Virus record (IMG/VR): IMGVR_UViG_3300042289_000986
Location: 62,001 to 126,000 of that record
Strand: one strand, 5' to 3'
DNA length: 64,000 bases
The notes beneath the pieces are model-generated. The model saw nothing but the letters and a program-made list of their open reading frames with translations, was not told the origin of the DNA and searched no databases. Numbering within the stretch: position 1 is the first letter of the stretch; every line of letters begins with the position of its first letter. Shown here piece by piece: positions 1,535-36,700 of this stretch. The position numbers were made by a program, and so were the translations under genes.

Positions 1535-2200
1535 ATGATTCTCTGTTTATCAGATATTCATTTAGGAAGTCCAATATGTCAGGCAGAATTGACATTAAAA
1601 ATATTAGAAGATTGCGAGTACGATAAACTTATAATTTGTGGTGATCTTTTAGATTCTTATAACATTCATAGACTTTGTAAAAAACAATGGAAAGTTTTAT
1701 CTGCCTTGAGGAAAATATCCAAAACTAAAGAGTGCATTTTCATTAAAGGAAATCACGATAAAAGTTTGGAAACCGTAAGTGCTTTGCTTGGTTTTGATTT
1801 TAAATTGGAACACATTGAAAAGATTGGTGGTAAAAAGTTTTATTTTGTTCATGGGGATAAATGGGATTATATAATTCAATTAAGACCATTGTTAACTGAA
1901 ATCGCATCGGGAATTTATTATTTTTTACAAAAAATAGATAAGACCCAAAAGTTTACAAGAAAATTAAAAAAGAAAATTAAAACTTGGAGATCATCTGCTG
2001 ATAAAGTTATGGAAAGAGTAGCTAATCACGGAAAAGATTTAAATTGTGATGTGGTTGTATTTGGACATACCCACATGCCAGAGCATAAAAACGTCAATGG
2101 AATAGAATGTGTTAATTTAGGTTCTCAGTGTGATCTACCAGTTACATACTGTAAAATAAGTAATAAAGGTAACATAACTTTAAAAAGTTTAGATAAATAG
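1535..2200 (+). CDS. Calcineurin-like metallophosphoesterase, LpxH (UDP-2,3-diacylglucosamine hydrolase)-like
   Basis: Motifs SDIHLG, GDLLD, GNHD, HGD, FGHTH, N(L)GS. Confidence 0.8.
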   Translation: MILCLSDIHLGSPICQAELTLKILEDCEYDKLIICGDLLDSYNIHRLCKKQWKVLSALRKISKTKECIFIKGNHDKSLETVSALLGFDFKLEHIEKIGGKKFYFVHGDKWDYIIQLRPLLTEIASGIYYFLQKIDKTQKFTRKLKKKIKTWRSSADKVMERVANHGKDLNCDVVVFGHTHMPEHKNVNGIECVNLGSQCDLPVTYCKISNKGNITLKSLDK

Positions 2201-3187: not shown

Positions 3188-3196
3188 TTTTGAAAG

Positions 3197-3653
3197 TGGA
3201 GGTGAGGAGAGTTGAACTCCTGTCCAAATAATCTAGGCTAAAAGGTCTACATGTTTGAGTGTCTTTAGCATTTCAGCCACCATACGGTAACGGAGACTTT
3301 AGGCTGCATAGTGACACTAACTGAGTTTATAGTCTGCCTGTAGACATTATCGCAATCTACATACGGTTGATATTTTGTTGTTACGTTAGAACTACCAACA
3401 ATCTAACAACCTCTGCTATCAATGATTCTTTAGAGGATCCAGAATCAAGGTTCTTAGGCGGCTAAGAGCATCTCTTCATCCGCATATGAGGCGAGAACCT
3501 CATCAGCGTTGTTGAAAATACTCTCGGCTTCTGCCAAGAGATCAGAAGTGAAATCTTCTGCATTTAGTTTTTTAATCGATTTTTTACGAGGCCATCGATT
3601 AACCTCGACATGCACTTTTAGTTTCAACTATCTGTCGAAACCAGTACACCCCC
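3197..3653 (-). ncRNA. ssrA: tmRNA (about 457 nt)
   Basis: 5' GGGGGTGTACTGGTTTCGAC; 3' GACAGGAGTTCAACTCTCCTCACCTCCA; acceptor stem with G3.U70; internal tag frame 3561-3454 ending LLAA-stop. Confidence 0.95.
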
Positions 3654-8509: not shown

Positions 8510-9064
8510 GTGAAAACATTAATCATTCACCCAAAAGATACAAGTACTGTTTTTTTAGAACCAATCTACGAAAAGATTGATAACAAAACAGTTATCCAAA
8601 AAGATTGTTCCTTTGAACAACTTATTAATCTCATTGAAACACACGATAGAATTATGATGATGGGTCATGGTTCTCCTGATGGATTATTTTCTATTGGTAA
8701 TTTTGATGAGGGGTATGTTATTGATAAAAATATTGTGGATTTTTTAAAAAAGAAAAAAGAATGTTTTTATCTTTGGTGCAACGCTGATAAATTTGTTGAA
8801 AAATATCAATTGAATGGATTTTATTCAGGAATGTTTATTTCCGAAGTTAATGAGGCAAATTTTTGTAATGTGAATACCGATCAAAAATTGGTTAATGAAT
8901 CAAATTATTCTTTTTCTAAAATTGTTTCTAAATGGGCAAATTATGATATGAAAAACTTGTATGATAATGTAAAGATGGAATATAGCAAACTTGCAGAGTT
9001 TAATAATGTAGCTCTTTATAATTTAAAAAGACTTTATTATCAAACTAGCATAAATATTATTTGA
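8510..9064 (+). CDS. Hypothetical protein (caspase/CHAT-like GHG motif)
   Basis: IMMMGHGSPDG and LWC; TTGACA promoter upstream. Confidence 0.45.
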   Translation: MKTLIIHPKDTSTVFLEPIYEKIDNKTVIQKDCSFEQLINLIETHDRIMMMGHGSPDGLFSIGNFDEGYVIDKNIVDFLKKKKECFYLWCNADKFVEKYQLNGFYSGMFISEVNEANFCNVNTDQKLVNESNYSFSKIVSKWANYDMKNLYDNVKMEYSKLAEFNNVALYNLKRLYYQTSINII

Positions 9065-9097
9065 CAAAAGGAAAGATCTTTGATATGTTAGTAATAC

Positions 9098-9400
9098 GAT
9101 TTGGTGGCAGTTATAACCAAATCAGGATAAAAATTTTTGCTTGTTGGTGAGTTGGGGTTTTTATCTGAGCTAGGGGAGCCAAGCTGCGGTAAGCTATGAT
9201 CCTATGCATTTATACAATACAAGCTATGGACGAAGTTGTGTTCTGCGGATTGCGGAGCCTTCGTTGAGTAGTGGGACAAATTCTAGAATAAAACCCACTA
9301 AACACCAATTCGGGTTAATCTTGTAAGAGGAGCCGACTTTCCGTGGTTGTATAAACATGGCTGAGATTAGTCCTGAATCGTCGCGGGTAAACGATTCACA
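9098..9400 (+). ncRNA. Unassigned structured ncRNA (about 300 nt)
   Basis: Own promoter TTGACA(9061)-N17-TATGTT; GC-rich; no ORF; multiple nested helices. Confidence 0.7.
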
Positions 9401-9466
9401 TTTTCAGTAAATATTATTGTTATTTTTCTCGCGGAAACTTAGAGGTTTTTGCGAAAGGAGATAACA

Positions 9467-9571
9467 ATGACATTAATAATAGGAACAATAGTCTTAGCAT
9501 TTAACATTAAACTTGCATGTTTAGGTTATTTGGTAATGATTACAGAAATGTTTGGCAGACACACTCGATAA
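9467..9571 (+). CDS. 34-aa hydrophobic peptide with strong SD (not in track)
   Basis: AAAGGAG-ataaca-ATG; MTLIIGTIVLAFNIKLACLGYLVMITEMFGRHTR. Confidence 0.55.
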   Translation: MTLIIGTIVLAFNIKLACLGYLVMITEMFGRHTR

Positions 9572-9596
9572 TGAATGATTCTGACTAACGTTTTTG

Positions 9597-9630
9597 AAAC
9601 AAGGGTAGAGAAATCTACCCTTGTTTTTTT
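9597..9630 (+). terminator. Intrinsic terminator
   Basis: AAACAAGGGTAGA-GAAA-TCTACCCTTGTTT then T-run. Confidence 0.85.
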
Positions 9631-9657
9631 ATAACTTAATGATATATTGTTTACATG

Positions 9658-9744
9658 GGTGCGATGGCTGAGTGGTCTAAAGCAGGAGTTTACTAAACTC
9701 TCGAAGTTTAATCGCTTCCGTGGGTTCGAATCCTACTCGCACCG
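9658..9744 (+). tRNA. tRNA-Ser(ACT)
   Basis: Acceptor GGTGCGA/TCGCACC, G73, long variable arm, loop TT-ACT-AA. Confidence 0.88.
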
Positions 9745-15828: not shown

Positions 15829-16203
15829 ATGGATTTATTATTTGTTTACGGTACTTTAATAGAAAATAAAAAAACAAAAATACATAAACTTTTAAACAAA
15901 AATAGTTTGTATATATCTAAAGCTGTTTTTCAAGGTAAACTTTATGATACAGGAAAATATCCAGCAGCAATAAAATCTAATAAAAAAAATGACATGGTTA
16001 TCGGAAATATAATAAAAATATTAGATTTAGAAATATTAAAAAAAATAGACGAATATGAAGGATTAGAGTATAAAAGAAATATAACGACATTAGTAGCTAA
16101 TAAAAAAAATATAAAAGCTTGGATTTATCTTTATTGTAAATCGATTGAGAAACATAAAAGAATAATATCGGGTAATTGGTTAAAATATAAAAAAATAGAT
16201 TGA
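15829..16203 (+). CDS. Gamma-glutamylcyclotransferase (AIG2-like) family protein
   Basis: LFVYGTL, GKLY..G.YP, DEYEG..YKR, AWIY. Confidence 0.85.
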   Translation: MDLLFVYGTLIENKKTKIHKLLNKNSLYISKAVFQGKLYDTGKYPAAIKSNKKNDMVIGNIIKILDLEILKKIDEYEGLEYKRNITTLVANKKNIKAWIYLYCKSIEKHKRIISGNWLKYKKID

Positions 16204-16246
16204 CTGATTAAATATATCTGGTAAATTAGATATAGTTCTTTGAAAA
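16200..16246 (+). promoter_or_regulatory. Sigma70-like promoter followed by boxA-like element
   Basis: TTGACT-N16-TAAATT then GTTCTTTGAAAA (16235-16246). Confidence 0.6.
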
Positions 16247-16257
16247 ATTTAAAAAAG

Positions 16258-16597
16258 TTTAATGTTGGCTAGTCGAACCAGCATTAAAAATCCTGATGCG
16301 AAACCCATCAGGTAACAAGGTATGCAACTCTACCTCTCTATACAACGGATACGTGTCCGTGTTCTGATCAGACATATAGAGTCCCATAGTGGATAACTTA
16401 AAAGTGAAAAAAAAGAGTGTAGGTTCTGGGTAAACCGAAGCTAGATTGGCTAAAACCCTTGTCCCGAAAGGGGTAAAGGTTCTGTGTTCTGATTCTAAGC
16501 ATTATGGCCCAATCGAACAACGATTGGCTTAGATAATGCCAGCAGATTAAGGCGCAACTTAATCGTCAGTCTGGTCCTGTTTGCGACAAAAACACCA
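16258..16597 (+). ncRNA. Unassigned structured ncRNA, 5' domain/RNA A (about 340 nt)
   Basis: GC-rich, no ORF, more than 8 helices with multibranch closure, ends ACCA + U-rich spacer. Confidence 0.7.
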
Positions 16598-16607
16598 ATT
16601 TTTATAA

Positions 16608-16789
16608 TCCGAGAATCCTAACGAGATTCTAGTCAGTACCCACTGATGAATAGAAGCTGTTCGTTACAGTAATAAGGGGGATGGTTGCCGTGACTCGCAT
16701 ACGGTGTGCGTAAGTTGACTCGTCTGAAAAGATAGGGAGTCCGTGCTTGATTCCGAAAGGAAAATGATGGTATGTAAAGACAGCCGAAA
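16608..16789 (+). ncRNA. Unassigned structured ncRNA, 3' domain/RNA B (about 180 nt)
   Basis: Hairpins AGAATC/GATTCT, TCAGT/ACTGA, GCTGT/ACAGT, GACTC/GAGTC; two GAAA tetraloops. Confidence 0.65.
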
Positions 16790-16814
16790 TTTTTTAATTC
16801 TTTTATAATTTAAT

Positions 16815-16888
16815 TCCTTGGTGGGCTAACGGTAAGCCAACAAACTGTTAATTTGTTCATCATGCTGGTTCGAATCCAGCCCAAGGAG
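16815..16888 (+). tRNA. tRNA-Asn(GTT)
   Basis: TCCTTGG/CCAAGGA; ACAAA-CT-GTT-AA-TTTGT. Confidence 0.92.
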
Positions 16889-16970
16889 CTTTTATTAAAT
16901 GTATAAAAATGGTGTTATACTAAGCCAAACCATTATATAAAATGTTACATATAATATGTAAGTATTATAT

Positions 16971-17525
16971 ATGAGTATAAATGCAGATCGTGTTAAAGCT
17001 TGGAGAAAAGATACTAAAAATTTAATTGTTGAAGGGTTTGGAGGAAAATGTTGTATATGTGGTTATGATAAATGTGAAGAAGCTTTTGATATACACCATA
17101 TAGATCCTACTCAAAAGACATTATCTTTTGGAGGAATAAGAGCTAATCCTAAACAATGGAAAATTTTATTAAAAGAGTTAGAAAATTGCGTTTTATTGTG
17201 TGCTAACTGTCACAGAGAATATCATGCAGGTAAAACTAACATCCCAAAAAATATTCCAAAATTTGTAGATTTAAAAGAAAAAAGAAAAATAAAAACATAT
17301 TGTCCAATTTGTAATAAGCAAAAAGCAAATTATCTTATAACTTGTTCAAAAACTTGTGCTGCAAAAAGAAAATCTCAAATCGAATGGGATAATTTTGATT
17401 TATATGATTTACACGTAATTCAAAAATTAAGTAATCTTAAAATAGGAAAAATAGTTGGTGCTTCTGATGTTGCAGTTATAAAAAGATTAAAAAAATTAAA
17501 AATTTATCAACTTCAAAATAATTAG
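16971..17525 (+). CDS. HNH endonuclease with Zn fingers and C-terminal HTH
   Basis: CCICG..FDIHHIDP..CVLLCANCHREYH; CPIC..CSKTC. Confidence 0.85.
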   Translation: MSINADRVKAWRKDTKNLIVEGFGGKCCICGYDKCEEAFDIHHIDPTQKTLSFGGIRANPKQWKILLKELENCVLLCANCHREYHAGKTNIPKNIPKFVDLKEKRKIKTYCPICNKQKANYLITCSKTCAAKRKSQIEWDNFDLYDLHVIQKLSNLKIGKIVGASDVAVIKRLKKLKIYQLQNN

Positions 17526-18689: not shown

Positions 18690-19703
18690 ATGATTAAACA
18701 CGTTGATGTTATTGTCGGTCTTGCTTGGGGGGATGAAGGCAAGGGTAAAATTTCAAGTGCAATGGCCAAAGACTATGATATGGTCTGTCGTTGGAATGGT
18801 GGACCAAATGCTGGTCATACTGTTTATTTGGATGGGAAAAAATACAAAACCCATCTGATTCCTTCTGGTGTTTTTCATGGAAAGAAATCTGTTATCGGTC
18901 CAAACTGTGTTCTGAATATTGAGAAGTTTTTCAAAGAAATTGAATATCTAAAAGAAAATGGATTCGATACATCTTTGGTAAAAGTTCATCCAAATACTCA
19001 TGTGATTACGGATGCACACATTGAATATGATCTGAAACATTTGAAACCAAAACTTGGAACTACAGGTCAAGGTATTGCTCCTTGTTATGCAGACAAAGCA
19101 AATCGTGTTGGTATTCAGGTTAGTAAAGCAAACTTCAATCCCTTAAAAGATTTTATTTGGGATGGAAAATTAGAAGGAAAAATTCTTTGTGAAGGTGCTC
19201 AAAGTATTTGGTTGGATATCAACTACGGTGATTATCCTTATGTGACAAGCTCTGAAACATTTCCTCACAATGCTTGTTCGCTTGGATTTTCACCCAAGAA
19301 AATTCGTGATATTATTGGTGTCGCTAAAATCTATGATACCAAAAGTGGAGTTGATCCGTTGTTTCCAGAATGTCTTTGGAGTGATGTAAAACTAAACAAG
19401 TTAATTGAACTTGGTCAAGAATTTGGTTCTACTACAGGAAGAAAAAGACTTGTGAATTGGTTGAATTTTGGAAGATTAAACAATGCTATTAATCTTTCAG
19501 GTTCAACCAAAGTAATCATCAATAAGTGTGATGTTTTTGAAAAAGTTGGAATCTTCCGAATTAATAATTTTTACGAAACATCTTTGGAAACAAATTCTTT
19601 TGATCAGTTAAAAGACATCATTAAAAAGTCTTTGGTAAATCAAAACATCAATGGATTAAAACCAAATAATATTATTTTTTCTGGTGATCAGACGAATATT
19701 TAA
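18690..19703 (+). CDS. purA: Adenylosuccinate synthetase (short form)
   Basis: GLAWGDEGKGK, GGPNAGHT, GTTGQGI, EGAQ, YPYVTSS, EFGSTTGRKR. Confidence 0.95.
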   Translation: MIKHVDVIVGLAWGDEGKGKISSAMAKDYDMVCRWNGGPNAGHTVYLDGKKYKTHLIPSGVFHGKKSVIGPNCVLNIEKFFKEIEYLKENGFDTSLVKVHPNTHVITDAHIEYDLKHLKPKLGTTGQGIAPCYADKANRVGIQVSKANFNPLKDFIWDGKLEGKILCEGAQSIWLDINYGDYPYVTSSETFPHNACSLGFSPKKIRDIIGVAKIYDTKSGVDPLFPECLWSDVKLNKLIELGQEFGSTTGRKRLVNWLNFGRLNNAINLSGSTKVIINKCDVFEKVGIFRINNFYETSLETNSFDQLKDIIKKSLVNQNINGLKPNNIIFSGDQTNI

Positions 19704-34720: not shown

Positions 34721-36700
34721 TTATTTGATTGGACATGCACCGCCTTCACATTCCAAACCTTGAATAGCATCTTCTCCCATATCAGAAGATTTCATTGTTT
34801 GAATTGGTTTAACTTTAGCTTTATTTTTTTCGTATGTTTCACCATTAATTTCTTCGTATGGTGCTTGTTTGAATCCGTGATTTTGTCTCAACAAAAAGCT
34901 TACAGATTTAATTGAATTTTGATAATTTTCTTCTAACCATTTTTTAAGCTCTGGAAGTTCTTCTTCCGAGTAATATGCGGTAACACTAACTGCATTATCT
35001 GACCAAATAGTTTGAAGTTTTTTAACTGTTTCCAGTTGTTTGATAACTCCCATATCTGCTGCAAAAATTGCACCATCTGGTGTTTCGCACGGAAACTCAA
35101 TAACAACGGTATCATGATTTTCTGAGCCATCAAAATTGATGACATATTCGGTATGATATCCCATATCTCTGCAATATTGAACTAATGGATCATTACTTGC
35201 CATACGAACACGACGAGTATAATATTTTGAATAAGCGGGGTGGATTCCTGGTGTAGCACCACCAAGAAGACTTAATGTTCCACTAGGCTTAATTGTTGTA
35301 AGTTTAATACTACGAGGCCATCCTTTTTGTTTACTCCACTCTTTATCAAATTTTCTCAATTCTTTATAACAATCGTCAAGCCAATCGACTTTATCTAATG
35401 CTTGACAAACACCAGTTACTCCCAAACCAAGACGCATGTTCTTGTGAACAATTTTATTTGTTTCATCGTGAATGAATGGAAGTGCAGCGATTGCTTTTTG
35501 TGTTTTATAAAGCAATCTGGCACAATCAACCAATTCTTCTTTGTTTGAAATATTATTCAAATAAAGTTCTGAGAGATTGCAACACTCATAAGAGGCAAGA
35601 CTAATTTCACCACATGGGTTTGTACCAACTACATTGTCTTCATCGGTTGGATAAAGACTAGAATCCTTCATTGGACCATCTTTAATTCTTCCATATTTTT
35701 GAGAAAGAGGAAGGTTAAAGAAACCATAAGGTTCGCCTTTTGCAAAACCAGTTTCTTTATCTGTTGTATAACCATTTTGCCAGATCTCGTTTGAGATGTG
35801 GGAAAAGTCATCAGCATAAATCGTGTTGTTAGACATTGCTCTCCAGTTAGGAATATTTCCCAATGACCAATTTTTGGCGCGTAAAAAGAGATAATCATCA
35901 GGATCTCCTATAGCAATTTGGGCAGAGCGACGAACATTACCAGAAACAACAATACTTCCAATAATATTACAAATATCTAATACATCGATAGAACGAAGCT
36001 TTTTGCCTTCTCTTGTTTGAAAGATTTTTGCAATTTTGTCAATACCTTCGATTAATATTCCTGCTCCGCTTGCTTGTCCACCGAAACCTTGAATCTTTTC
36101 ACCTGCACCACGAATAAGGATTGTAGAATAATTAAAAGATTTTCCTGTTACATAAAATGCATGAAGAACTCGATCTAAAAGTTCGATCCAGCCTTCACGA
36201 CTATCTGGAATAATAAACTTTGCATCTTTTGTACATTCATGTGTAATCGTTACACCTTTTTTAATTTTAGGAAGTTCGTGAATATCTTCTCTACGAATAG
36301 AAAATCCGACACCACCACCAAGCATTAAATTTTCAAATAAAAACAAAAATGCTTTTGGTTCATTCATAGACACATTCCAACAATTCAATAAAGAATTTGC
36401 TCCAAAACGCTCAACTGTGTTTGTTCCTAATTGCCAAAGCATTCTTCCTGCATAGTTGCAACGCAAGTTGAAAATATGATCAAACAGTCTTTCGGCTTCT
36501 TCTTGTGTATAATCTGCACCTAGTTTTTGTGCTCCGTTGATACAACGTTGAATTGTTTCATGCCACTCTTCTTTTTGTCCATCGTCTTTTAAACGAGCAT
36601 ATGTTCTTTTATAAACAATATAACCAAGTCCATTGAAACCCCAATTAGTTTTTTTGTTAGAATATTTTTTAACAAACGAATCCGAAATAATTTTTTCCAT
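34721..36700 (-). CDS. nrdJ: Class II (adenosylcobalamin) ribonucleotide reductase
   Basis: KRTYAR, NC, GGGVG, NVRRSA, TNPCGE, TIKPSGT, C-terminal CEGGACP. Confidence 0.93.
   Translation of the reverse strand: MEKIISDSFVKKYSNKKTNWGFNGLGYIVYKRTYARLKDDGQKEEWHETIQRCINGAQKLGADYTQEEAERLFDHIFNLRCNYAGRMLWQLGTNTVERFGANSLLNCWNVSMNEPKAFLFLFENLMLGGGVGFSIRREDIHELPKIKKGVTITHECTKDAKFIIPDSREGWIELLDRVLHAFYVTGKSFNYSTILIRGAGEKIQGFGGQASGAGILIEGIDKIAKIFQTREGKKLRSIDVLDICNIIGSIVVSGNVRRSAQIAIGDPDDYLFLRAKNWSLGNIPNWRAMSNNTIYADDFSHISNEIWQNGYTTDKETGFAKGEPYGFFNLPLSQKYGRIKDGPMKDSSLYPTDEDNVVGTNPCGEISLASYECCNLSELYLNNISNKEELVDCARLLYKTQKAIAALPFIHDETNKIVHKNMRLGLGVTGVCQALDKVDWLDDCYKELRKFDKEWSKQKGWPRSIKLTTIKPSGTLSLLGGATPGIHPAYSKYYTRRVRMASNDPLVQYCRDMGYHTEYVINFDGSENHDTVVIEFPCETPDGAIFAADMGVIKQLETVKKLQTIWSDNAVSVTAYYSEEELPELKKWLEENYQNSIKSVSFLLRQNHGFKQAPYEEINGETYEKNKAKVKPIQTMKSSDMGEDAIQGLECEGGACPIK

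What the first reader, a model, noticed from the sequence alone, without database searches (positions are those of the whole stretch)
9061..9405. Second unassigned structured ncRNA with its own consensus promoter
Seen: TTGACA-N17-TATGTT, then a 5' hairpin GATTTGGT/ACCAAATC. A long interrupted helix TTGGTG..GGGTTTTTATCT / AGAATAAAACCC..CACCAA encloses AGCT/AGCT, TAGG/CCTA and ACGAAG..TTCTGC/GCGGAG..CTTCGT arms. A second domain GGGTTAATCT/AGATTAGTCC and a final TGAATCGT/ACGATTCA hairpin follow. No ORF. Its first hairpin (TGGCAGTTATAACCA) loosely resembles that of the 16.26-kb RNA (TGGCTAGTCGAACCA), hinting at a shared 5' module (weak inference). No RNase P, SRP or tmRNA signature.
Basis: partly seen in the sequence, partly recalled or inferred. 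Interest (0 to 1): 0.78.

Follow-up and report, generated by a model that had tools for sequence, protein, structure and literature searches.

The report
New structured RNA in phage tRNA islands
A large uncultivated lake phage encodes, among its tRNA genes, a roughly 215-nucleotide non-coding RNA of a family absent from Rfam 15, whose conserved fold includes a self-complementary loop suggesting that two copies pair, as in the giant phage RNAs ROOL and GOLLD.

Summary
The finding is real. Window 9096-9312 (+) is the core of a non-coding RNA gene with a sigma-70-like promoter (9061-9089) and a clade-specific 3' add-on (9312-9405). I found 15 distinct homologues (13 full-length), one per contig, all in uncultivated viral or metagenome contigs and 12 of 14 inside tRNA islands. 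Rfam 15, deposited phage genomes and T4 RNAC/RNAD give no match.

On a 17-sequence alignment, 91.8% of proposed pair cells are paired (32-44% in slid controls). 36 pairs changed on both sides, and 0 of 500 shuffles reach any measure.

The fold has:
- a 5' hairpin whose loop pairs with the helix-d loop;
- a pseudoknot (helices a/a' and b/b');
- a k-turn-like loop;
- two 3' hairpins, the second with an 18-nt near-invariant loop.

The centre of that loop is always self-complementary: UCUAGA, UCCGGA or UCUAGG. It switched UA/CG at least twice with no intermediates seen. The likeliest reading is a symmetric kissing-loop homodimer.

Its long inner helix, its AGCU/AGCU arm and its "shared 5' module" are not supported. 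Transcription and function remain unproven.

The parts
9061..9089 (+). Sigma-70-like promoter: -35 TTGACA (9061-9066), 17-nt spacer, TG-extended -10 TATGTT (9084-9089). The predicted start is about A9096.
   Evidence: 10 of 12, best in the region. By my inspection of the upstream sequences printed, -35 and -10 boxes are kept at the same distance in 10 of 14 homologues. L054 has none and instead abuts tRNA-Cys.
9096..9312 (+). Conserved core of the RNA, about 215 nt, present in all family members.
   Evidence: Covariance model R1 scores 185.1 bits (E 3.6e-42). There is one copy in the window. Homologues score 85-229 bits and chance loci <=19.7 bits. G.U pairs in several helices fix the + strand as the RNA strand.
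9098..9123 (+). H0, the 5' hairpin GAUUUGG/CCAAAUC with a 12-nt loop (9105-9116). The loop segment GCAGUU (9107-9112) pairs with the helix-d loop.
   Evidence: helix 1: 98.9% paired, 6 of 7 pairs covary; loop-loop complementarity of 4-8 bp in every member.
9139..9224 (+). Helix a/a': GCUUGU (9139-9144) with ACAAGC (9219-9224). Adjacent helix e/e': UUGGG (9152-9156) with UACAA (9213-9217). Together they enclose the k-turn arm.
   Evidence: a/a' is 100% paired with 4 of 6 pairs covarying; e/e' is 86.7% paired. RNAalifold recovers a/a' independently.
9145..9307 (+). Pseudoknot helix b/b': UGGUGA (9145-9150), a bulge between helices a and e, pairs with ACACCA (9302-9307) at the 3' end. It crosses a/a'.
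   Evidence: helix 3: 91.1% paired. Column pair 59-243 is A-U in 8 and G-C in 7 sequences.
9169..9207 (+). Helix c (GCUAGG 9169-9174 with CCUA-U-GC 9201-9207), then a k-turn-like internal loop, then helix d. The non-bulged strand of the loop is G9175-G9176-A9177. The bulged strand is U9195-A9196-U9197 then G9198-A9199 then U9200. Helix d is GCC 9178-9180 with AGC 9192-9194. Its loop is 9181-9191, and AGCUGC (9182-9187) is the partner of the H0 loop.
   Evidence: helix c is 97.6% paired with 4 pairs covarying; the N-G-A / 3 nt + G-A signature is present in 14 of 15 members that have the region. One search supports the loop-loop pairing.
9230..9264 (+). H3, a two-part hairpin: ACGAAG/CUUCGU at the base and UUCUGC/GCGGAG at the top.
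   Evidence: helices 7 and 8: 91.2% and 87.7% paired, with all 7 upper pairs covarying. RNAalifold recovers it.
9270..9299 (+). H4: stem (A)GUGGG/CCCAC(U) with a near-invariant 18-nt loop, ACAAAUUCUAGAAUAAAA (9276-9293). The self-complementary centre is AUUCUAGAAU (9280-9289), with core UCUAGA at 9282-9287.
   Evidence: the stem is 94.1% paired and all 6 pairs covary. Central loop positions are UA in 12 and CG in 5, never mixed; flanking positions are U-A in 15 and U.G in 2; C-G in all 17; at least 2 independent UA/CG switches; self-duplex of 6-10 bp, -7.6 to -11.9 kcal/mol.
9312..9405 (+). Clade-specific 3' add-on. It comprises helix GGGUUAAUCU (9312-9321) with AGAUUAGUCC (9364-9373), an inner helix AGCCG (9331-9335) with UGGCU (9358-9362), and a terminal hairpin GAAUCGU (9375-9381) with ACGAUUC (9391-9397). 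The terminal hairpin has an invariant loop CGCGGGUAA, followed by UUUU (9401-9404).
   Evidence: 22 pairs, 6 with compensatory changes, in the window, L059, L002, L013 and L015. The module is absent or different in L007, L018, L025, L008, L026, L054 and L056.
9658..9744 (+). Context: tRNA-Ser (anticodon ACU). In close relatives it follows the RNA directly.
   Evidence: In L007 the RNA core ends 1 nt before this tRNA. In L054 the RNA starts 5 nt after tRNA-Cys.

Best explanation
This is a stand-alone gene for a stable, highly structured non-coding RNA. It belongs to a family absent from Rfam 15 and is carried in the tRNA islands of large, uncultivated, T4-superfamily freshwater phages.

Shown by comparative analysis:
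- The roughly 215-nt core folds into a compact architecture.
- The 5' hairpin loop kisses the loop of an arm that is bent by a k-turn-like motif.
- A bulge between two stacked helices pairs with the 3' tail, forming a pseudoknot.
- Two 3' hairpins follow. The last one displays an 18-nt, A-flanked loop whose centre is always self-complementary.

Inferred:
- The RNA is transcribed from its own sigma-70-type promoter or as part of a tRNA precursor.
- Its ends are trimmed by the tRNA-processing enzymes (RNase P at a downstream tRNA, a 3'-processing enzyme at an upstream one).
- Two copies join through the palindromic loop into a symmetric kissing-loop homodimer.
- The dimer acts as an RNA scaffold or decoy during infection, in the same still-unexplained functional niche as ROOL, GOLLD and T4 RNAC/RNAD. 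The likeliest connection is to the phage's tRNA and translation take-over.

The biochemical target is unknown.
For: - Family and single copy: model R1 finds one copy per contig at 85-229 bits. Chance loci score <=19.7 bits.
- Structure: 91.8% of cells are paired against 32-44% when slid. 36 pairs changed on both sides, and 0 of 500 shuffles reach any of the 5 measures. RNAalifold recovers H0, a/a', H3 and H4 on a MAFFT-only alignment and on the 17-sequence alignment.
- Pseudoknot: b/b' is 91.1% paired, with A-U in 8 and G-C in 7 sequences at one pair.
- Intramolecular kissing loop: cognate loop pairs average -7.98 kcal/mol against -5.87 for permuted partners. Only 2 of 20000 permutations are as good.
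- K-turn signature in 14 of 15 members.
- Dimer loop: the adjacent central bases are UA (12) or CG (5), never mixed. At least 2 coordinated switches are needed on the tree. The U.G variant arose twice and keeps RNA but not DNA self-complementarity. Kretsch et al. used the same argument for OLE L9.3 and GOLLD L21a.
- Niche and processing: tRNA genes flank the RNA in 12 of 14 loci. L054 starts 5 nt after tRNA-Cys, and L007 ends 1 nt before tRNA-Ser.
- Not a leader: another promoter follows the RNA in L018, L025 and L008.
- Weak expression hint: the words held by two lake metatranscriptomes number about 6 and 3 for both the 801-nt stretch and the RNA alone. By that count they all fall inside the RNA.
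Against: - No direct evidence of transcription.
- Dimerisation is inferred from sequence only. A U-A-closed CUAG/CCGG tetraloop inside the big loop would also tolerate the central changes, and a protein or another RNA could be the loop's real partner.
- The alignment used for the pair counts was fitted to the model, which biases it towards the structure.
- There are only 15 distinct sequences from related phages.
- The host is unknown, no partner gene is conserved nearby, and the function is unknown.
Confidence: 0.6

Rival explanations
1. The RNA works as a monomer. The conserved 18-nt loop of H4 is a recognition site for a protein (phage or host, perhaps a dimer) or pairs with a conserved host RNA. 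On this reading the RNA is a decoy or sponge, or a trans-acting base-pairing regulator, and the palindrome is incidental or reflects a symmetric protein.
For: The loop is almost invariant outside 3-4 positions, which is more than self-pairing alone requires. The A-rich flanks ACAA and AAAA are strictly kept. Phage RNAs that bind host factors are an established kind.
Against: No complementary target in the 64-kb window beyond chance: 2 matches, one of them the loop itself, against 1.1 expected. No conserved neighbouring protein gene. A fixed external partner does not explain two coordinated UA/CG switches with no intermediates.
Confidence: 0.25
2. It is a cis-acting leader, such as a riboswitch, attenuator or processing signal. 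It would control the downstream tRNA-Ser or the small downstream ORF rather than act as an independent RNA.
For: In the window and its close relatives it lies directly upstream of tRNA-Ser(ACU). Its 3' add-on ends in a hairpin plus U-tract that could act as a weak terminator. The fold uses a k-turn, a pseudoknot and a kissing loop, modules common in riboswitches.
Against: The downstream element differs between members: tRNA-Ser, tRNA-Pro after another module, or a fresh promoter and an unrelated gene in L018, L025 and L008. In L054 the RNA sits between two tRNAs. The terminator-like add-on is missing from most lineages. No riboswitch family matches.
Confidence: 0.05
3. It is a catalytic RNA, for example a self-cleaving or processing ribozyme that helps mature the polycistronic tRNA transcript.
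For: Invariant junction nucleotides (CUWUG-ACG and CGUUGA) lie next to a pseudoknotted core. The RNA is placed inside tRNA precursors.
Against: No match to any ribozyme family in Rfam 15, even at E<=10. No conserved cleavage-site context. The tRNA boundaries are explained by RNase P and RNase Z.
Confidence: 0.05
4. It has no RNA function. The conservation would reflect DNA-level signals (a protein-binding palindrome, an origin, a recombination site) or a small unrecognised coding region.
For: TCTAGA is a DNA palindrome. Transcription has not been shown directly.
Against: 36 base pairs show compensatory changes, including many G.U pairs that work on one strand only. The UCUAGG variants break the DNA palindrome but not the RNA pairing. 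There are 1-2-nt indels and no conserved ORF. TCTAGA is not enriched in the window: 10 found against 14 expected.
Confidence: 0.03

Closest known systems
ROOL and GOLLD RNAs (Rfam RF03087, RF01998)
   Same: They are phage or prophage RNAs 'often near tRNA islands' with unknown function. They have elaborate pseudoknotted folds and assemble through kissing loops. One line of evidence for this is covariation of adjacent bases in palindromic loops (PMC12286853).
   Different: No sequence or structure homology: no Rfam hit even at E<=10. This core is about 215 nt, against roughly 580 nt and more than 800 nt. Only one self-complementary interface is evident here, which predicts a dimer rather than an 8- or 14-mer cage. 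No experimental structure exists.
Bacteriophage T4 RNAC and RNAD (species 1 and 2 stable RNAs)
   Same: They are small stable RNAs of unknown role encoded in the tRNA cluster of a T4-type myovirus, next to tRNAs (PMC3014915, PMC9697503). The window's phage is a distant T4-superfamily relative.
   Different: Model R1 with filters off gives nothing on the rnaC/rnaD strand: 2.5 bits there, and a best of 13.5 bits inside a protein gene. The T4 RNAs are shorter (139 and 119 nt).
Symmetric kissing-loop dimerisation hairpins (HIV-1 DIS; OLE L9.3)
   Same: A hairpin loop carries a 6-nt or longer palindrome flanked by unpaired purines. Natural variants switch between alternative palindromes. This is established knowledge for DIS; for OLE and GOLLD.
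   Different: The loop here is much larger (18 nt) with strictly conserved A-rich flanks. The context is a phage non-coding RNA, and dimerisation is untested.
Kink-turn (k-turn) motif, as in the lysine and SAM-I riboswitches and box C/D RNAs
   Same: A Watson-Crick stem, a 3-nt bulge, G-A on both strands placed to form tandem sheared pairs, then a second stem. The bend would let the arm's loop reach another loop, as in the L2-L3 kissing loop of the lysine riboswitch (established knowledge).
   Different: It is only a sequence-level match. L058 has U in place of one G, and L008 lacks the module. No L7Ae-type protein was identified.
phi29 prohead RNA (pRNA, RF00044)
   Same: A phage-encoded structured RNA that multimerises through loop-loop pairing.
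   Different: There is no Rfam match here.

Membership tests
Any Rfam 15 family (including RNase P, SRP, tmRNA, 6S, ROOL, GOLLD, raiA, OLE, riboswitches, ribozymes) | Covariance-model score at or above the family's gathering threshold | tested here: not met
   no hit in 9061-9405 at gathering thresholds; the best at E<=10 is SNORA11 at 21.7 bits (threshold 36), i.e. noise.
ROOL / GOLLD kind (phage ornate RNAs) | Encoded by phages or prophages, typically beside tRNA genes | tested here: met
   All members lie on viral or metagenome contigs. tRNA genes flank the RNA in 12 of 14 loci.
ROOL / GOLLD kind (phage ornate RNAs) | Large size (about 580 nt, or more than 800 nt) and homo-oligomeric cage | tested here: not met
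   The core is 213 model positions. Oligomeric state cannot be tested with these tools.
Symmetric kissing-loop dimer element | A self-complementary stretch of at least 6 nt in a hairpin loop, in all members | tested here: met
   the three central pairs are self-complementary in 17 of 17, giving a 6-10 bp duplex.
Symmetric kissing-loop dimer element | Covariation of adjacent central bases that keeps the palindrome | tested here: met
   UA in 12, CG in 5, no mixed state. At least 2 switches on a tree built without the loop.
Symmetric kissing-loop dimer element | Physical dimer in solution | not testable with these tools
   Needs native gel, SEC-MALS, mass photometry or cryo-EM.
K-turn motif | C-stem, 3-nt bulge, G-A on both strands, NC-stem | tested here: met
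   the N-G-A / NNN-G-A pattern is flanked by covarying helices c and d in 14 of 15 members. The sheared-pair geometry itself cannot be tested.
T4 RNAC / RNAD | Detectable sequence or structure homology to the T4 genes | tested here: not met
   R1 with filters off on T4 68000-75000 gives no hit on rnaC or rnaD.
T4 RNAC / RNAD | Small stable RNA gene located in the tRNA cluster of a T4-type phage | tested here: inconclusive
   Location is met. Stability and expression are not shown.
Cis-regulatory leader / riboswitch | Constant position upstream of one kind of gene, plus an expression platform | tested here: not met
   The downstream element varies, and a new promoter follows in L018, L025 and L008.
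Base-pairing sRNA | A conserved single-stranded seed with complementary targets | tested here: inconclusive
   No target in the window beyond chance. The host genome is unknown, so host targets could not be searched.

The most novel reading that the evidence does not exclude
This is a miniature, self-assembling relative-by-function of ROOL and GOLLD. It would be an RNA-only symmetric dimer (or higher assembly, if the lineage-specific 3' modules add interfaces) made by large, near-jumbo freshwater phages from their tRNA operons. Together with the neighbouring roughly 560-nt RNA at 16.2-16.8 kb, it would show that tRNA-island quaternary RNAs are a broad, recurrent phage invention with a shared role in taking over tRNA or translation.
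Probability: 0.3. Interest if true: 0.78.

Novelty: new variant of a known kind. Interest (0 to 1): 0.6.

Why it matters
Phage tRNA islands repeatedly harbour abundant structured RNAs whose function has resisted explanation. T4 RNAC and RNAD have been unexplained for decades. ROOL and GOLLD were recently shown to be RNA-only assemblies.

This family is small enough (about 215 nt; a dimer would be about 140 kDa) to be tractable for probing, crystallography or cryo-EM. It combines well-defined modules: a k-turn, a pseudoknot and an intramolecular kissing loop. It also carries comparative evidence for an intermolecular interface.

If the dimer is real, self-association extends from giant ornate RNAs to a compact one. 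That would give a simpler model for asking what such RNAs do during infection. The family also adds a curated alignment and model for a class missing from Rfam.

Tried and rejected
1. A tertiary pairing between the J strand (GAACUUGU in the L002 group) and the 5' half of the H4 loop. It is only 70.8% paired and most departures are broken cells. Rejected.
2. Not conserved.
3. The loop as an antisense seed. No target in the window beyond chance. TCTAGA is not enriched.
4. RNA-seq. The two lake metatranscriptomes gave only a spurious 38-nt match in the upstream ORF when laid. Only the word counts are suggestive.
5. Cultured phages. Megablast and blastn with the window's RNA and three divergent members found nothing in 50,697 records.
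6. Bacterial genomes. One strict loop-pattern scan gave a single apparent chance match (no flanking stem) in a Desulfobacterales MAG. The pattern was strict, so absence from prophages is not proven.
7. The pattern TGACG..GTTRA..CAANTTCTAGA gave no new hit with the hairpin stem or the loop's 3' half (apparently chance matches).
8. Homology to T4 rnaC/rnaD. None.
9. The IMG/VR structured-RNA catalogue (PMC10690425) could not be checked because no supplements are held. Its candidates are 29-151 nt, so at most a fragment could be listed there.
10. Neighbouring proteins. There is no Ro, L7Ae, RtcB or other obvious partner.

Full report
**Setting.** The 64-kb window is part of a large myovirus.
- It encodes a tail sheath, a large terminase, a ribonucleotide reductase and a virion protein. 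It also carries 14 tRNA genes and a tmRNA. G+C is about 31%.
- The sheath and terminase are at most 35-39% identical to T4-superfamily phages. No deposited phage genome matches the DNA.
- The same sequence lies on a 211,587-bp IMG/VR contig. All of its sampled words occur in at least 16 lake-water DNA runs from 2020 and 2024. So this is a persistent, uncultivated freshwater phage.

**The observation.**
- TTGACA-N17-TATGTT at 9061-9089 is the best sigma-70-like match between 8400 and 10600, at 10 of 12 with a TG-extended -10.
- No ORF longer than 44 aa overlaps it.
- Rfam 15 has no match at gathering thresholds. Only noise appears at E<=10.
- The single-sequence fold is only mildly better than shuffles, with z = -1.99. 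The case therefore rests on comparison with homologues.

**Homologues.** I collected related loci in three ways.
- Through the flanking 184-aa ORF.
- Through four informative DNA-pattern scans of the viral and metagenome collections.
- Through a covariance model (R1, 213 positions, 45 pairs) to confirm them.

Model R1 finds exactly one copy in the window (9096-9312, 185 bits). It finds one in each of L002, L003, L007, L013, L018, L025, L026, L054, L055, L056, L058, L059 and L008, plus truncated copies in L005, L015 and L057. Full-length members score 85-229 bits. Thirty-four chance-hit loci give at most 19.7 bits, mostly short local matches to the loop motif that had been used to fetch them. 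Outside the loop, members are 37-94% identical.

**Secondary structure.** RNAalifold on a MAFFT-only alignment already recovered four elements with compensatory changes: the 5' hairpin, a helix GCYUGU/ACARGC, and the H3 and H4 hairpins. It recovered the same four on the 17-sequence alignment, where 22 of 28 predicted pairs are compensated.

Explicit pair counting on the 17-sequence alignment gave the following:
- 91.8% of 855 cells are paired, against 32-44% when partners are slid by 1-3 columns.
- 36 of 56 pairs changed on both sides.
- 0 of 500 shuffles reach the observed value for any of the five measures.

Per helix:
- H0: 98.9% paired.
- a/a': 100% paired.
- b/b': 91.1% paired.
- e/e': 86.7% paired.
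- c: 97.6% paired.
- d: 86.0% paired.
- H3: 91.2% and 87.7% paired (lower and upper parts).
- H4: 94.1% paired.

Frequent G.U pairs identify the + strand as the RNA strand. One caveat applies. This alignment was fitted to the model, so it leans towards the structure. The MAFFT-based result and the slid controls argue that the signal is real.

**Higher-order features.**
- *Pseudoknot.* Helix b/b' (UGGUGA 9145-9150 with ACACCA 9302-9307) crosses a/a' (9139-9144 with 9219-9224). One of its pairs is A-U in 8 sequences and G-C in 7.
- *K-turn-like loop.* Between helices c and d the strands read N-G-A and NNN-G-A in 14 of 15 members. This matches the sequence signature of a kink-turn.
- *Intramolecular kissing loop.* The H0 loop is complementary to the helix-d loop in every member, with lineage-specific sequences: GCAGU/GCUGC, GUAG/CUAC, UUCAUGAC/GUCAUGGG, UGUAGGU/ACUUACA and AUGCAGG/CCUGCGU. 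Cognate pairs average -7.98 kcal/mol against -5.87 for permuted partners. Only 2 of 20000 permutations do as well. The 5' hairpin is therefore docked onto the k-turn arm. It is not a generic 5' stabiliser.

**The conserved loop.** H4 has a fully covarying stem and an 18-nt loop, ACAAnUUCYRGRnnAAAM, at 9276-9293.
- Its central hexamer is UCUAGA in 10 of the 17 aligned sequences, UCCGGA in 5 and UCUAGG in 2.
- The two adjacent central bases are UA or CG and never mixed.
- On a tree built without the loop columns, the CG lineages (L055/57, L054/56, L026) are interleaved with UA lineages (L018, L058). At least two coordinated double switches are therefore needed.
- The A-to-G change that gives U.G arose twice, in L025 and L059. 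That variant is self-complementary as RNA but not as DNA.
- The predicted self-duplex is 6-10 bp, at -7.6 to -11.9 kcal/mol.

Adjacent bases cannot pair within one molecule, so this pattern points to pairing between two copies. Kretsch et al. used the same reasoning for OLE L9.3 and GOLLD L21a. Three alternatives are not excluded: a small U-A-closed tetraloop inside the loop, a protein partner, or an RNA partner.

**Context and maturation.**
- tRNA genes flank the RNA in 12 of 14 loci.
- In L054 the RNA begins 5 nt after tRNA-Cys and has no promoter of its own. In L007 the core ends 1 nt before tRNA-Ser.
- In L018, L025 and L008 a new TTGAC-type promoter and an unrelated gene follow directly.
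- By my inspection of the upstream sequences printed, ten of 14 members have -35 and -10 boxes that place the start at the first base of the model.
- It follows (inference) that the RNA is an independent product. It would be made either from its own promoter or from a tRNA precursor, and trimmed by RNase P and the tRNA 3'-processing machinery.
- The 3' add-on of the window (9312-9405) is real but clade-specific. L054 and L056 carry a different add-on.

**Expression.** Two lake metatranscriptomes hold about 6 and 3 sampled words, whether the query is 8900-9700 or only 9096-9405. By that count the RNA-library signal lies inside the RNA and not in its flanks. This is only a hint.

**Comparison with known RNAs.**
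- There is no homology to any Rfam family.
- There is no homology to T4 rnaC or rnaD. These share the niche and are likewise of unknown role.
- In genomic niche and in the evidence for self-association, the closest known kind is ROOL/GOLLD. This RNA is three to four times smaller, unrelated in sequence, and shows only one symmetric interface.

The 16.26-kb RNA is itself a conserved large RNA: 87% identity to L007, with a compensated 5' hairpin and variable insertions. It has no Rfam match. Its hairpin loop (CUAGUCGAA or AUAGUCGGA) does not resemble the H0 loops. The H0 loops vary with their internal partner. A shared module is not supported.

**Verdict.** This is a genuine family of structured phage RNA that is absent from Rfam 15 and from the deposited phage genomes searched. 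Its fold is well supported. A homodimeric kissing-loop state is plausible but unproven, and its function is unknown.

Noticed in passing
window 16230-16790 (+), promoter-like TTGACT at 16201: A second, much larger ORF-free RNA candidate of about 560 nt lies just upstream of tRNA-Asn (16815-16889). It is 87% identical to L007 7930-8554, with a compensated 5' hairpin and variable inserted arms. It has no Rfam match even at E<=5. It may be another novel tRNA-island ornate RNA.
   Followed up: partly
window 9658-9744; also L002, L007, L013, L014, L015, L059: The tRNA-Ser downstream of the RNA has the unusual anticodon ACU (A at position 34). This is conserved in all close relatives.
   Followed up: no
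window 9467-9571 and 9601-9630: Only in the window, a 34-codon hydrophobic small ORF (preceded by AAGGAG at 9455-9460) and a terminator-like hairpin with a T-run are inserted between the RNA and tRNA-Ser. In L002, L059, L013 and L015 the tRNA follows the RNA directly.
   Followed up: partly
L054 1840-2040 (+) and L056 about 1607-2039 (-): These two members share a different conserved, apparently structured add-on between the RNA core and tRNA-Pro. This suggests modular 3' extensions in this family.
   Followed up: no
window 3196-3653 (-): A phage-encoded tmRNA (138 bits, tag peptide ADEEMLLAA) lies on the opposite strand to the tRNA genes.
   Followed up: no
window 16971-17525 (+): An HNH endonuclease ORF lies directly after tRNA-Asn and the large RNA. 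It recalls the homing endonuclease segB inside T4's tRNA cluster.
   Followed up: no
window 9301-9310 and 16591-16600: The 10-mer AACACCAAUU occurs both in the b' strand of this RNA and in the large 16.26-kb RNA. In L007 the small RNA's copy has changed while the large RNA's copy has not, so this is probably coincidence.
   Followed up: partly
window 18690-19703 (+) and 34721-36700 (-): Auxiliary metabolic genes: adenylosuccinate synthetase (E 1e-82) and a class I or II-type ribonucleotide reductase large subunit.
   Followed up: no
window 9096-9405 as a whole: Every sampled word of this stretch is present in at least 16 lake-water DNA runs from 2020 and 2024. The phage is therefore a recurrent member of lake communities.
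   Followed up: no
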